Assembly: GCA_002269645.1 (NCBI GenBank)
Contig: NIVC01001611.1
Location: 62,001-126,000 of the forward strand
DNA length: 64,000 nucleotides
Origin: Macrostomum lignano
Lineage: Eukaryota
Direction of reading: 5' to 3'
This document shows positions 18,301 through 21,300 of this stretch, in pieces. The notes beneath the pieces were generated by a model. That model was not told the DNA's origin. It ran no database searches and was given only the letters and a program-made list of their open reading frames with translations. Numbering within the stretch: the stretch's first letter is position 1; every line of letters starts with the position of its first letter. The position numbers and the translations under genes were made by a program.

Positions 18301-21300
18301 CTCTCCTCCCCCTCTGCCCAGACAGCCAACCCCGTCCTATGCTCAGCGGCGCAATATGGACAGGAAGGAGAGAAAAGGGTGGAGCTTGCATAGGACTGGC
18401 TGAGGCACGAGTACTGAGCCCCACACACGCCCCACACACACCCAACACTGCTCTTCCCCTCGAACAACGTTAAAAAACTGGGCGTCGCAACCAAAAATCG
18501 ACTAAAACTAACTGGCCTATATATTAACAACAGACTCCATCGGTCCCAAAAGAATTTTCTCCAATTCAACTGGACTATGCCTGCCTGCATGAGCATCTGC
18601 GTTGCAGCCAGTGGCCAGTTTCAGGCGTCGCAGCAGGTTTCCCCGTCCGACAGATTTTCGTCCAACGCCGTCAGCCCTAGGCGACCAGCGTTGATGCTGG
18701 TCGACAATCGGAGCCAGCCGGCCGCCAACGATCCGGAGGTCCCGATCGGCAATTCATCTTCGACTTCTTCGGATTTCGCCGCGGCAGGCTGTTGCGTCAT
18801 CGGCGGCCGAGTCCGTCTTCGTCCTGAAGCTGCCTACGTTCAACTTGGCGACGTTGACGCCCCAGGAGCCCGGTGCGTGCGCATTGTGCACATCGGCGAC
18901 TCGTTCTACCGAAAGCGTCGGGGTGGAACTGCTGTTGAACTGGCGGGTCGGATACCAGACGGAGACGTGCTGGTGCACTCCGGCGGAGACTTCGGCTCCG
19001 ACGGTGGCTTCAGCAGAGACAATGGCAACACCAGGGCGAGCCTCAGAGACCGTTTTGGCAGCATTCTCAGTCCACTGCTGAGACAGCGCAAGCTGCACCA
19101 GCTGCGCGACCTGCTGTCGGCGCTGCCGCACCGGCACAAAATCTTGGTGCCCGCTTGCGACACAAACGTCGGCCAGAGAGATGTTCAACAGCTGCTTGGC
19201 TCTGCTTGCCACTGCTTGCGGAATTCCTCCGTGACTCTGGAAGGTGTCACCTTCTACGGGATGTCGTCGGCAAAACCAACCGAGGATGAACTGTCAGCGG
19301 AACTGGAGTCAGTCGACGTGCTGGTGTCGCACTGTCCACCGCGGGACCAGGAGCTTGCCCGCGAAGTATTTCAGAGAATCCGGTAAGTACTTCTATGAAA
19401 GACTTCTATTTACCGTTTTGGTTTGACCATTTATCTAATGCACGGAAATACCCCAATTCTTTATTCCAGTCCAAAGGCCCTCCTGCAAGGGCATTCACCG
19501 GTCACAGATCTTCACAGCGAGACGCAATGGCAGGACGGCGTTCTGCTCTGCAACGACCACCAACTAGCTAACAGGGACAAAGAGGCCACGGCGGTTGGGA
19601 AAAGAGAATTCAACAAGCCGGTAGTTATCGATTTTTACACCTGTCGACCAATGAGCGGCATCAGCCAGGAGTACTCGGAGGTGATGCGGTCAGTCGGCTG
19701 CAAGCAGAATCGCTCGAAAAAGCAATCAAAGCACTCTGAATGCAACCTGTTGTAATTCAGAAATGCTCTTCCGAATGCAACTCGAAAGAGAAGAACAGGA
19801 TTTCTCCTCTCTAATTGATTCATAACTCACGAGCTTTTACACAGTGCTATATGGTATATCATGCTTAAGTATACTTTCGACCGCTTATGACTTCATGTGC
19901 AGGCAGGCACCGCTTCGAAAAATCAGTCAGCCCATTAACCATCCACCATCAGCTACAAACTGCTGGCTTTTGTGCATTTTGTTGCGGTCAGCTTGTAATT
20001 GGCCGACAATCAAACAAAATTCATTGTGCATTGTGCAAGTATCTGAGTTCGGATTTTTAAGCAGTCTCGTCCATATGAAAAACTTCGGTCGTTTTAAATC
20101 CCATTGTTATCTGTAACATTTTTCGTAGAAATTTCCCTTTTGCCAATCGGAACCGCGTGTATTCGTCACGTGACTTGTTTTTGTCTTATTCAAAACACTT
20201 CATTTTAACAAAAAACGTTCGGTAAACGCACAAAACAAGACAAAACCGAACGATTTGCTTTGACATTGAGAACGAGACTGGCGCTTTCTCTTCTTCATCC
20301 TGTGCGTAATTTTTGCCTCGTTTCATCGACGTGCTTTGTTTTAAACAATTGGCCCTTCGTATTGAAATTATTTGTTAATTTGTTTGTTAGTTTCTAATCT
20401 TGCACCATAGTATTTTGCTGCTCGACCTGTTTTGAAGATAGCGTTTCGCTATTGACACCTTGATTTATTAACTTATCAACCCCCAACAGTCCAGCAAGCG
20501 ATGCTTTGATTTGAATTCCTGCTGATTTACAATTAAACTACATTCATAAATAATTATTATTGGTTTTTTCCGCCTCCGTTTGACGCGAGCAATTTAAGAA
20601 AAATATAATTTACAAAATCATTTTCAAAAAAACAGTTCAGCGATTCAGTGAATCGTATTTCAATATTTAGAGGATTTCACGACGACTCATTCAATGCTTA
20701 ACGGTCTACTTGAGTAGTTATAGACACATTTTAATATGTTGGCTTTTGCTGTCATAATTTCAGGCACTTGTAGTTTAAACCCCTAGCAATCAATATGTTC
20801 AAAGATGAATCTTCATAAAAGTACATAAAAGTACATGTGCCTTTGGGAATGCGAAATCAATCCATGAATTTTATCGGGGGAGGTCAACGGACCCTGACCA
20901 TGACCCCTAGAAGATCCACCAACTGTCCGCAAGTTTATTTATAAATGAAGATGATTCAAAACTGTATATCCTATATACTAAAAATGGTCTGTCGGTATCT
21001 ATCTGGGTAGGTACGAGTATGCGATCGATTTTAGCAAAAATAGCTCAACCGATTTACTTCAAAATTGCACTGTTCGATAAAAAATTTTCACTACAAATGA
21101 TGTCCTGACGCCCAAAATTTCTCGGGGAGGGTCACCTGACCTCCCACCTTTAAATTTCCCGGGGAGGGTCCCCTGATCCCCAACTTTCTTTCTCGGGGAG
21201 GGTCACCTGACCCCTAACTTTCTCACTTTCTCGGGGAGGGTCCCCTTACCCCCAACTTTCTCGGGATTTTCAGGAGGTTCGCCTGACCCCTTCCGACCAC

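What the first reader, a model, noticed from the sequence alone, without database searches (positions are those of the whole stretch)
18577..19755. Nested antisense pseudo-metallophosphoesterase with a prenylation tail inside the neuronal kinesin gene
Seen in sequence: an intact 363-aa, 2-exon gene on the plus strand inside KIF1A intron 4. Established: calcineurin-like phosphoesterases use DxH, GD, GNH(E/D), H and GHxH motifs. Here they read GDSF (His lost), GGDF (Asp kept), PACD (Asn and His lost), SHCPP (kept) and GHSP (second His lost). The protein ends [17 protein letters not shown], a polybasic patch plus CaaX with X=Leu (geranylgeranylation type), which I do not recall in MPPED1/2. There is also an N-terminal GCC dicysteine. 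Inference: a membrane-anchored pseudoenzyme that may be co-regulated with, or interfere with, the host motor gene.
Basis: partly seen in the sequence, partly recalled or inferred. Interest (0 to 1): 0.75.

Follow-up and report, generated by a model that had tools for sequence, protein, structure and literature searches.

The report
Degenerate prenyl-tailed MPPED paralogue in kinesin intron
A real, selectively maintained flatworm (Macrostomum lignano) gene sits antisense inside an intron of the KIF1A-like kinesin gene; it encodes a relative of MPPED phosphodiesterases that has lost half of its metal-binding catalytic residues and ends in a lipid-anchor (CaaX) signal. This is a modest curiosity, not a new kind of system.

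Summary
Exon 1 (18577-19382), an 87-nt GT-AG intron and exon 2 (19470-19755) encode 363 aa. This is identical to Macrostomum lignano PAA57987/PAA65845 ('hypothetical protein', UniRef 'Metallophos domain-containing'), whose gene models were built from RNA-seq. The gene lies antisense in coding intron 4 of a KIF1A-like kinesin-3 gene in all four genomic copies. Between copies there are 8 synonymous changes, 1 non-synonymous change and no indels (pN/pS 0.04, P~1e-4), so it is a maintained coding gene.

Pfam does not detect it. Homology is clear all the same:
- E 1e-13 to an intact M. lignano paralogue;
- 82 bits to a family HMM;
- the AF2 model's best PDB match is rat MPPED2.

Alignment confirms the motif states. 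The first-metal-site His ligands and the catalytic Asn-His are lost. The Asp, Asp, His and His of the second site are kept, with Asn changed to Cys. The CNLL end with a basic patch is real.

CaaX ends also occur in three catalytically intact relatives and in Hymenolepis, so the tail is a recurrent family trait. Parasitic flatworms carry a conserved clade degenerate at the same positions, but that clade does not group with this gene.

Prenylation, loss of activity and any coupling to the kinesin remain untested.

The parts
18577..19382 (+). Coding exon 1 (Met1 to the first two bases of the Arg269 codon). It holds the N-terminal extension (residues 1-85) and motifs I-IV.
   Evidence: ORF and splice model. 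It equals the annotated CDS of PAA57987/PAA65845.
19383..19469 (+). 87-nt GT-AG intron, phase 2, in the codon before Pro270.
   Evidence: An intron at the same position and phase occurs in the Hymenolepis diminuta and Schistosoma mekongi homologues. Between copies 4 of 87 bases differ, against 9 of 1092 in the CDS.
19470..19755 (+). Coding exon 2 (last base of the Arg269 codon to Leu363 plus TAA). It holds motif V, the last beta-strands and the C-terminal tail.
18889..18906 (+). Motif I, H105-I-G-D108-S-F110. The Asp is kept and the metal-1 His is replaced by Phe.
   Evidence: Alignment A4.
18976..18993 (+). Motif II, H-S-G-G-D138-F. The bridging Asp is kept, with a one-residue Gly insertion.
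19147..19164 (+). Motif III, V-P-A-C194-D-T in place of V-A-G-N-H-E. The metal-2 Asn has become Cys and the catalytic His is lost.
19327..19341 (+). Motif IV, S-H252-C-P-P. The metal-2 His is kept.
19489..19500 (+). Motif V, G-H277-S-P279. The first His (metal 2) is kept and the second His (metal 1) is replaced by Pro.
19702..19734 (+). Basic patch K347-H357 ([11 protein letters not shown]) upstream of the CaaX. It lies in a low-confidence (disordered) tail.
   Evidence: Sequence. AF2 pLDDT is about 45-57 for residues 340-363.
19741..19755 (+). CaaX box C360-N-L-L363 followed by TAA.
   Evidence: Sequence. It is identical in all four copies.
18518..18525 (+). TATATATT, a TATA-like element 59 nt upstream of the ATG (possible core promoter).
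   Evidence: This is a sequence match only. The 5' flank diverges 0.6-0.7% between copies.
21409..21543 (-). Host kinesin-3 coding exon 4 (switch [13 protein letters not shown]...GLAD). Bounds are approximate and taken from the peptide match.
15376..15462 (-). Host kinesin-3 coding exon 5 ([29 protein letters not shown]). Bounds are approximate.
15463..21408 (-). Host intron 4 (about 5.9 kb), which contains the nested gene and a 32-bp minisatellite (15660-17163).

Best explanation
This is a genuine protein-coding gene of Macrostomum lignano (Mlig021091). It is a fast-evolving paralogue of the MPPED / UPF0046 class III metallophosphodiesterase family.

**What is shown:**
- It keeps the family's ancestral two-exon structure and its metallophosphoesterase fold.
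- It has gained an 85-aa disordered N-terminal extension and a 40-aa tail.
- It has lost the ligands of metal site 1 (His to Phe110, His to Pro279) and the catalytic Asn-His pair (to Cys194-Asp195).
- It keeps Asp108, Asp138, His252 and His277.
- It lies antisense in intron 4 of the KIF1A-like gene in all four copies.

**What is inferred:**
- It can no longer act as a two-metal phosphodiesterase. It more likely works as a non-catalytic binding module, for a nucleotide or phosphate ligand or for a partner protein, in the way the inactive metallophosphoesterase-fold protein Vps29 works as a scaffold.
- Its CNLL end is geranylgeranylated by GGTase-I. Together with the basic patch, this would hold the protein on the cytoplasmic face of membranes.
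- Its place in intron 4 of the KIF1A-like gene is a positional fact without demonstrated regulatory meaning.
For: **Real gene:**
- The ORF is intact and identical or 1 aa different in four genomic copies.
- Public gene models for this assembly are built from RNA-seq transcript assemblies (PMC5730564).
- Between copies there are 8 synonymous and 1 non-synonymous change, pN/pS 0.04, binomial P 9.5e-5. There are no indels in the CDS, although the flanks carry indels and 0.6-2.6% mismatches.

**Family:**
- phmmer against 1.84 billion representatives gives, as best non-self hit, the M. lignano paralogue P0007 (43% identity, E 1e-13). P0007 has all five motifs and a PF00149 hit.
- The gene scores 75-82 bits against an HMM of canonical relatives.
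- Relatives match rat MPPED2 at E 2e-38.
- In the AF2 model the core residues 86-330 are mostly confident, and the Foldseek top hits are rat MPPED2 3rl3/3rl4/3rl5 (E 1e-9). Vps29 appears further down the list.

**Motif states:**

**Not a retrocopy:** the intron matches H. diminuta and S. mekongi in position and phase, and many family fragments end at the same point.

**CaaX:**
- The end is CNLL-stop with a basic patch.
- CaaX-type ends recur in the relatives P0002 (CLVM), P0008 (CTLM), P0057 (CVLI) and Hymenolepis (CCLQ). P0002 and P0057 are complete ORFs.

**Nesting:**
Against: - No direct expression, localisation, prenylation or enzymatic data exist. The gene id appears in none of the searched papers or supplements.
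- Pfam PF00149 does not hit the protein at all, even at E<=10, so the family assignment rests on closer relatives and a predicted fold.
- The purifying-selection test rests on only 9 substitutions between very recent duplicates.
- Three metal-2 ligands are retained and Asn has become Cys, so a single-metal site and residual or altered activity cannot be excluded.
- The a1 residue of the CaaX is Asn, and no prenylation predictor could be run.
- The mean pLDDT of the model is only 69, and its coordinates could not be inspected.
Confidence: 0.7

Rival explanations
1. The protein is not dead. It has been remodelled into a single-metal protein that uses Asp138, Cys194, His252 and His277 (a zinc-type ligand set), with new or residual hydrolytic or sensing chemistry at the membrane.
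For: - The losses are selective. Both His ligands of metal 1 are gone, while every metal-2 ligand is kept or changed to another metal-binding residue (Asn to Cys).
- The 22 cestode and trematode homologues show the same pattern at the same positions, including Asn to Cys (DTR / GDF / GCW[ED] / [ST]HMPAW / GHDF). They hold it invariant across both classes, which argues for a selected state rather than decay.
Against: - The catalytic His of motif III is lost in both lineages.
- No biochemical data exist.
- Asn to Cys could simply be a tolerated substitution.
Confidence: 0.2
2. The gene is the M. lignano orthologue of the conserved degenerate clade of parasitic flatworms. On this view the degeneration happened once, before Macrostomorpha and Neodermata split, and was not a lineage-specific event.
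For: - The same four positions are lost and Asn to Cys is shared.
- The loop after motif II is expanded in both.
- Hymenolepis has the same two-exon structure, with the intron at the same position and phase.
- Only the degenerate type was recovered from Neodermata, whereas M. lignano has one intact and one degenerate gene.
Against: - The candidate joins the neodermatan clade in 0.7% of NJ bootstraps, against 33% with the intact M. lignano paralogue.
- It scores lower against the neodermatan HMM (57 bits) than against the canonical HMM (75-82 bits).
- The replacement residues differ (Phe against Arg, Asp against Trp, Pro against Phe).
- The H. diminuta and S. mekongi genes are not next to kinesin exons.
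- The shared intron is ancestral for the whole family, so it does not discriminate.
- NJ on such long branches is weak evidence either way.
Confidence: 0.25
3. It is a decaying duplicate (a young pseudogene) or an annotation artefact, with no function of its own.
For: - Catalytic motifs are lost and it is invisible to Pfam.
- No orthologue was found outside M. lignano.
- No published expression data were found.
Against: - The 363-codon ORF is intact in four copies, with an 8:1 ratio of synonymous to non-synonymous changes and no indels.
- The splice sites are canonical.
- The gene model comes from a transcript-based annotation.
- At 43% identity to the nearest paralogue the duplication is old, and an unconstrained ORF would not have survived that long.
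Confidence: 0.05
4. The nested antisense position is functional: transcription of this gene modulates the KIF1A-like host, or is modulated by it, through interference or shared chromatin.
For: - The arrangement is present in all four copies.
- MPPED genes are neuronally expressed in mammals and flies (PMC10547211), and KIF1A is a neuronal motor.
Against: - The four copies are recent duplicates, so their agreement carries little weight.
- The coding sequence overlaps no host exon and lies more than 1.6 kb from either flanking one; transcript ends (UTRs) were not mapped.
- Homologues in Hymenolepis and Schistosoma are not in a kinesin gene.
- No expression data exist. Nested intronic genes are common in animal genomes (general knowledge).
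Confidence: 0.1

Closest known systems
MPPED1/MPPED2/dMpped (class III metallophosphodiesterases; invertebrate 'UPF0046 protein C25E10.12-like')
   Same: - It shares the fold: the best structural match is rat MPPED2.
- It shares the sequence blocks VRIVHI.D, IPDGD.LVHSG.DF, LPH.HKI.V, EG..FYG, VDVLV.H.PP, RIRP..L.GH and VIDFY.
- It shares the ancestral intron before the Pro of motif V.
   Different: - The metal-1 His residues and the catalytic Asn-His are lost.
- The PW segment after FYG and the Cys-rich loop after motif IV are deleted. The intact M. lignano paralogue also lacks the loop.
- It has an added N-terminal extension and a C-terminal CaaX tail.
- It does not reach the Pfam threshold.
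- Mammalian MPPED2 lacks a CaaX (from memory of its sequence, not tested here).
M. lignano Mlig006851 (P0007/P0035), the intact paralogue
   Same: It is from the same species and is the closest relative (43% identity, E 1e-13). It shares the loop deletion (PPWEELGREVRERIRP against [17 protein letters not shown]).
   Different: - P0007 has DTH, GDF, GNHD, TH and GHIH intact and hits PF00149.
- It has no CaaX and no N-terminal extension.
- Its gene has an intron after codon 7 and none at the RIR|P site.
- It lies at a different locus, next to p450 and histone deacetylase genes.
Degenerate MPPED-like clade of cestodes and trematodes (for example H. diminuta VUZ41045, the S. japonicum protein named 'UPF0046-like', O. 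viverrini T265_00516)
   Same: - The same catalytic positions are lost and the same ones are kept, including Asn to Cys.
- There is no Pfam hit at the gathering score, or only a borderline one.
- The loop after motif II is expanded.
- The intron is the same.
- Hymenolepis ends in CCLQ.
   Different: - The proteins are much longer (380-665 aa), with large low-complexity inserts.
- The replacement residues differ.
- Most lack a CaaX.
- They are not nested in a kinesin gene.
- There is no phylogenetic support for grouping them with the candidate.
Vps29 (retromer subunit)
   Same: It has a metallophosphoesterase fold used as a non-catalytic protein-binding scaffold. It appears among the lower Foldseek hits.
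   Different: It is a different, much shorter subfamily. It is not prenylated and shows no specific sequence similarity. The likeness is in mode of action only.
Geranylgeranylated proteins with a basic patch plus CaaL (Rho/Rap-type C-termini)
   Same: It has Cys at position -4, Leu as the last residue and a Lys/Arg-rich stretch just upstream, in a disordered tail.
   Different: It is not a GTPase. The basic patch is weaker (5 Lys/Arg plus 1 His in 11 residues). Lipidation is untested.

Membership tests
Calcineurin-like metallophosphoesterase superfamily (Pfam PF00149) | Match to the family profile at the curated threshold | tested here: not met
   hmmscan against Pfam-A gives no family even at E<=10. 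The intact paralogue P0007 scores 48.7 bits against a cut-off of 21.5.
Calcineurin-like metallophosphoesterase superfamily (Pfam PF00149) | Four-layer alpha/beta sandwich fold | tested here: met
   AF2 model: pTM 0.67, core blocks mostly pLDDT 80-95. The Foldseek top hits are rat MPPED2 (E 1e-9, TM 0.52 normalised to the target). 5'-nucleotidase, LpxH, the MJ0936-type phosphodiesterase and Vps29 follow.
Calcineurin-like metallophosphoesterase superfamily (Pfam PF00149) | Five motifs D-x-H, G-D, G-N-H-[ED], H, G-H-x-H that bind two metals | tested here: not met
   D-S-F, G-D, A-C-D, H, G-H-S-P. Four of the eight conserved residues are replaced.
MPPED / UPF0046 class III phosphodiesterase subfamily | Closest sequence relatives are subfamily members, and the subfamily-specific blocks are conserved | tested here: met
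   Best hits are P0007 (E 1e-13) and MPPED-like proteins. It scores 82 bits against a subfamily HMM. Relatives match rat MPPED2 at E 2e-38. The Lingula relative is named 'UPF0046 protein C25E10.12-like'.
MPPED / UPF0046 class III phosphodiesterase subfamily | Metal-dependent phosphodiesterase activity (cAMP/cGMP, bis-pNPP) | not testable with these tools
   This needs recombinant protein. The motif states predict loss of the two-metal mechanism.
Pseudoenzyme (maintained non-catalytic homologue) | Catalytic residues lost while the coding sequence remains under purifying selection | tested here: met
   Motif losses. 8 synonymous and 1 non-synonymous change, pN/pS 0.04, P 9.5e-5, no indels. The test uses recent intragenomic copies only.
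CaaX-prenylated proteins (GGTase-I substrates) | Cys at position -4 from the true C-terminus, aliphatic a2, and X = Leu | tested here: met
   C360-N-L-L363-TAA, identical in four copies.
CaaX-prenylated proteins (GGTase-I substrates) | Actual lipid attachment and membrane localisation | not testable with these tools
   No predictor or experiment was available. Recurrence of CaaX ends in relatives (CLVM, CTLM, CVLI, CCLQ) is indirect support.
Nested intronic (antisense) gene | The coding sequence lies inside one intron of a host gene, on the opposite strand | tested here: met
   The CDS at 18577-19755 (+) lies between kinesin exons at about 21409-21543 and 15376-15462 (-). The stitched host exons match KIF1A 4-388 in one stretch. 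The public annotation of the sister copy shows a 1176-aa minus-strand gene spanning it. Transcript ends (UTRs) were not mapped.
Neodermatan degenerate MPPED-like clade | Phylogenetic grouping and shared synteny | tested here: not met
   0.7% NJ bootstrap. The score against the clade HMM is lower than against the canonical HMM. No kinesin exons lie near the H. diminuta or S. mekongi genes. The method is weak for long branches.
Retrocopy of the intact paralogue | Intronless copy of a spliced parent | tested here: not met
   The candidate keeps the ancestral phase-2 intron, which the intact paralogue lacks.

The most novel reading that the evidence does not exclude
Two flatworm lineages, Macrostomum and the parasitic Neodermata, have converted an MPPED phosphodiesterase in the same way, either independently or once long ago. 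Metal site 1 and the catalytic His were removed. Site 2 was kept and its Asn changed to Cys, giving an Asp/Cys/His/His single-metal (zinc-type) centre. On this reading the proteins form a new functional class of metallophosphoesterase-fold proteins, in some cases lipid-anchored by a CaaX, and are not merely dead enzymes.
Probability: 0.15. Interest if true: 0.6.

Novelty: new variant of a known kind. Interest (0 to 1): 0.3.

Why it matters
On its own this is a small annotation gain. A 'hypothetical protein' becomes a maintained, catalytically degenerate, probably lipid-anchored MPPED paralogue in a transgenesis-capable flatworm model.

The wider point is that MPPED-type proteins, whose cellular roles are poorly understood even in mammals and flies, often carry CaaX ends in invertebrate or environmental relatives. 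In flatworms they have also given rise to conserved non-canonical forms. The form conserved across all sampled tapeworms and flukes has no canonical motif set and could be worth studying as a parasite-specific protein.

If the retained Asp/Cys/His/His set binds a metal, it would be a clean natural example of a two-metal hydrolase turned into a one-metal protein.

Tried and rejected
1. Pfam and PDB sequence searches with the protein alone gave no hits. Homology had to be reached through closer relatives.
2. A profile search with a 14-sequence alignment was swamped, probably by ankyrin repeats and low-complexity words, and returned only 6 proteins. A two-sequence profile worked.
3. A search for orthologues in other species found none. 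Nothing lies between the M. lignano copies and about 43% identity, either in the 90% clusters or in the 50% representatives. Conservation of the CaaX and the nesting in orthologues, and a cross-species dN/dS, could therefore not be tested.
4. The neighbour-joining tree does not place the candidate with confidence. It attaches to another long branch.
5. The gene id was searched in full texts and in the supplements of two M. lignano transcriptome papers and was not found.
6. Literature on prenylated metallophosphoesterases yielded nothing relevant.
7. Bacterial-type promoter and terminator scans are not meaningful for this eukaryote. No canonical AATAAA lies within about 750 nt of the stop codon.
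8. The retrocopy origin was rejected on intron evidence.
9. The long antisense ORF 18754-19212 (-) inside exon 1 was considered. It was dismissed as a by-product of 59% GC coding sequence, because it has no homologues and the selection pattern fits the plus frame.
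Full report
**What is in the sequence**

The plus strand carries an ATG at 18577 and an ORF that runs to a GTAAGT donor at 19383. An 87-nt intron ends in CAG at 19469, and the frame continues from 19470 to TAA at 19753-19755. Spliced, this gives 1092 nt and 363 aa. The coding sequence is 59% G+C in a 44% G+C window.

The protein is identical to P0006 (GenBank PAA57987.1 / PAA65845.1, BOX15_Mlig021091g3/g4). 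It differs at one residue from P0001 (PAA66236.1 / PAA67577.1, g1/g2). Both are from Macrostomum lignano assembly GCA_002269645.1. NCBI names them 'hypothetical protein' and UniRef 'Metallophos domain-containing protein'. The window corresponds to contig NIVC01001611.1: locus L002 has no differences across the gene span.

**Host gene and nesting**

Minus-strand translations contain the kinesin landmarks:
- [17 protein letters not shown] at about 31782;
- the P-loop at 28422;
- switch I at 27161;
- switch II at 21528;
- [13 protein letters not shown] at 15423;
- the neck [19 protein letters not shown] at 12795;
- an FHA-region exon at 11342.

Six exon peptides stitched in order give 393 aa. They align in one stretch to human KIF1A residues 4-388 (E 1.4e-178), ahead of KIF13B and KIF14. 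No exon is therefore missing. A DUF3694 'kinesin protein' exon lies further downstream at 2636-3163.

The nested gene lies between coding exons 4 and 5, in an intron of about 5.9 kb, on the opposite strand. Its coding sequence is more than 1.6 kb from either exon. The same arrangement is found in all four genomic copies. In the sister copy the public annotation shows a 1176-aa minus-strand gene spanning it.

**Is it a real gene?**

Three lines of evidence say it is.

1. The Mlig_3_7 annotation consists of genome-guided transcript assemblies (StringTie/TACO, cut by trans-splicing and poly(A) evidence) and not ab initio predictions (PMC5730564). A gene model with this exact spliced CDS therefore implies RNA-seq support. 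I could not see the reads, and I found no paper or supplement that mentions the gene.

2. The two sequence types among the four copies differ at 13 positions in the 1179-bp span. Four are in the 87-nt intron and nine in the CDS. Of the nine, eight are synonymous and one changes an amino acid (Q170R). Nei-Gojobori counting gives pS 0.030, pN 0.0012 and a ratio of 0.04. The chance of at most one non-synonymous change among nine under neutrality is 9.5e-5. The CDS has no indels, while the flanks show 0.6-2.6% mismatches and 12-43 gap columns.

3. The protein is only 43% identical to its nearest relative. The duplication is therefore old, and an unconstrained ORF of 363 codons would not have stayed open.

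**What family?**

Pfam-A gives nothing even at E<=10, and phmmer against PDB sequences gives nothing. The 5.8-billion-protein search found four remote PF00149 proteins (E 3e-7 to 2e-3). The exhaustive phmmer scan of 1.84 billion representatives found 20 hits.

The best non-self hit is P0007 (E 1e-13, 43% identity over residues 86-325). This is M. lignano BOX15_Mlig006851, a 237-aa protein with all five metallophosphoesterase motifs and a clear PF00149 hit.

Relatives of this group match rat MPPED2 at E 2e-38, and the Lingula member is named 'UPF0046 protein C25E10.12-like'. An HMM built here from canonical relatives scores the candidate at 75-82 bits.

An AlphaFold2 model built with a 51-sequence alignment has mean pLDDT 69 and pTM 0.67. 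Residues 1-65 and the last 25 or so are low-confidence, and most core blocks score 80-95. Its three best PDB matches are the rat MPPED2 entries (E 1e-9). Other metallophosphoesterase folds follow, including Vps29.

The protein is thus a divergent member of the MPPED / class III metallophosphodiesterase lineage by descent and fold. It fails the profile and motif definitions of the superfamily.

**Catalytic motifs**

In the 51-sequence alignment the candidate compares with canonical members as follows:

| Motif | Candidate | Canonical |
|---|---|---|
| I | IVHIGDSF | IVHISDTH |
| II | HSGGDF | HSGDF |
| III | KILVPACDT | KIFVAGNHE |
| IV | VLVSHCPP | VLVTHSPP |
| V | LLQGHSP | HLFGHxH |

From established knowledge of two-metal phosphoesterases such as Rv0805 and Mre11:
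- metal 1 is bound by the Asp and His of motif I, the bridging Asp of motif II and the second His of motif V;
- metal 2 is bound by the bridging Asp, the Asn of motif III, the His of motif IV and the first His of motif V;
- the His of motif III assists catalysis.

The candidate has therefore lost both His ligands of metal 1 (to Phe110 and Pro279) and the catalytic His. It keeps Asp108, Asp138, His252 and His277, and it has Cys194 in place of the Asn.

I add that the loss is selective for site 1. The candidate also lacks the 'SPW...' segment after FYG. It lacks the Cys-rich loop after motif IV as well; the intact M. lignano paralogue and the parasitic-flatworm proteins also lack that loop.

**The tail**

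The protein ends [19 protein letters not shown]-stop. Cys at -4, Leu at the a2 position and Leu as the last residue fit the GGTase-I rule, and the upstream Lys/Arg-rich stretch resembles Rho/Rap-type tails. This is general knowledge; no predictor was available here.

CaaX-type ends also occur in relatives:
- P0002 ends CLVM, P0008 ends CTLM and P0057 ends CVLI. All three have intact catalytic motifs. P0002 and P0057 are complete ORFs on environmental contigs.
- The Hymenolepis proteins end CCLQ.
- Lingula, the intact M. lignano paralogue, the ankyrin-fused forms, and the Schistosoma, Opisthorchis and Calicophoron proteins do not.

Five such ends among roughly sixteen independent full-length lineages is far above the share of proteins that carry Cys at -4 by chance, which I recall as a few per cent and did not measure here. 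A prenylation signal is therefore a recurrent trait of this family and not an invention of this gene. MPPED papers I could search do not mention it.

**A parallel in parasitic flatworms**

A profile of the candidate plus a trimmed Hymenolepis sequence retrieved 22 cestode and trematode proteins (Rodentolepis, Hydatigera, Taenia, Dibothriocephalus, Schistocephalus, Schistosoma, Trichobilharzia, Calicophoron, Opisthorchis, Echinostoma and unnamed assemblies). None has a precomputed Pfam domain. In my own scan, S. bovis P0044 matched PF00149 only at the cut-off (21.6 against 21.5 bits) and H. diminuta P0031 matched nothing.

All 22 share DTR / GDF / GCW[ED] / [ST]HMP[AT]W, and those that include the second exon share GHDF. 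These are the same positions lost and kept as in the candidate, including Asn to Cys.

The clade has 100% bootstrap support, but the candidate joins it in only 0.7% of replicates, against 33% with the intact M. lignano paralogue. The candidate also scores lower against the clade's HMM (57 bits) than against the canonical HMM. The H. diminuta and S. mekongi genes have no kinesin exons within 10 kb.

I therefore treat the resemblance as probably parallel. Neighbour-joining on such long branches cannot exclude a single ancient origin, to which I give about 25%.

**Gene structure**

The candidate's only intron splits the codon before Pro270 after its second base. The H. diminuta and S. mekongi genes have an intron at the same site and phase. 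Many single-exon fragments of canonical relatives end exactly there. This is therefore the ancestral family intron.

The intact M. lignano paralogue has lost it and has an intron after codon 7 instead. The candidate is thus not a retrocopy and not a recent copy of that paralogue.

**Most likely mechanism**

- Shown: a maintained coding gene; MPPED descent and fold; loss of metal site 1 and of the catalytic pair; a CaaL end with a basic patch; an intronic antisense position.
- Inferred: no two-metal phosphodiesterase activity; geranylgeranylation and membrane association; action as a binding or scaffold module.
- Not supported by any evidence: coupling to the kinesin.

The main open alternative is a remodelled single-metal site.

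**Verdict**

This is a new variant of a known kind, already present in databases as an uncharacterised protein. Its interest is modest.

Noticed in passing
proteins P0036-P0056, P0010, P0031; loci L006 (H. diminuta) and L007 (S. mekongi): All sampled tapeworms and flukes carry a long (380-665 aa) MPPED-like protein with invariant non-canonical motifs DTR / GDF / GCW[ED] / HMPAW / GHDF and large low-complexity inserts. None has a precomputed Pfam domain; in a fresh scan one (S. bovis P0044) reached PF00149 only at the cut-off. No canonical family member was recovered from these parasites. This looks like a conserved, uncharacterised parasite-wide protein.
   Followed up: partly
window 3901-54298, e.g. 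22529-25337, 12886-14773, 15660-17163, 28635-29442: The window is packed with minisatellites. More than 20 arrays of 12-59-bp units reach up to 113 copies and fill most kinesin introns. They create long spurious ORFs on both strands.
   Followed up: partly
L004 12851-12984 (copy on NIVC01001473.1): In one of the four M. lignano copies the kinesin switch-II exon matches as two overlapping pieces in different frames. This suggests a frameshift or an assembly error in that copy.
   Followed up: no
L002 / L001 annotations: The public annotation treats the kinesin differently in sister copies. One has a single 1176-aa gene spanning the nested gene. The other has a 294-aa kinesin-domain gene that starts only upstream of it, so the host gene model appears split or truncated in the window's own contig.
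   Followed up: no
window 41946-42789 (+): Exons of an importin-5-like gene (IPO5 TPR repeats E 1e-20; Importin_rep_4).
   Followed up: no
window 61206-62816 (+): A 536-aa ORF with a weak match to the DNA polymerase delta subunit Cdc27/POLD3 family (E 8e-7, just above the Pfam cut-off).
   Followed up: no
proteins P0024, P0026, P0027 (environmental contigs): These are MPPED-like domains fused to N-terminal ankyrin repeats. It is a domain architecture I have not seen described for this family.
   Followed up: no
window 18754-19212 (-): A 152-aa ORF antisense to exon 1 of the nested gene. It has no homologues and is most likely a by-product of the GC-rich coding sequence.
   Followed up: partly
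PDB entry 3rl5: A rat MPPED2 H67R mutant has been crystallised. His to Arg at that position is exactly the motif-I state (DTR) fixed in the parasitic-flatworm clade. That structure could serve as a template for what the natural variants look like.
   Followed up: no
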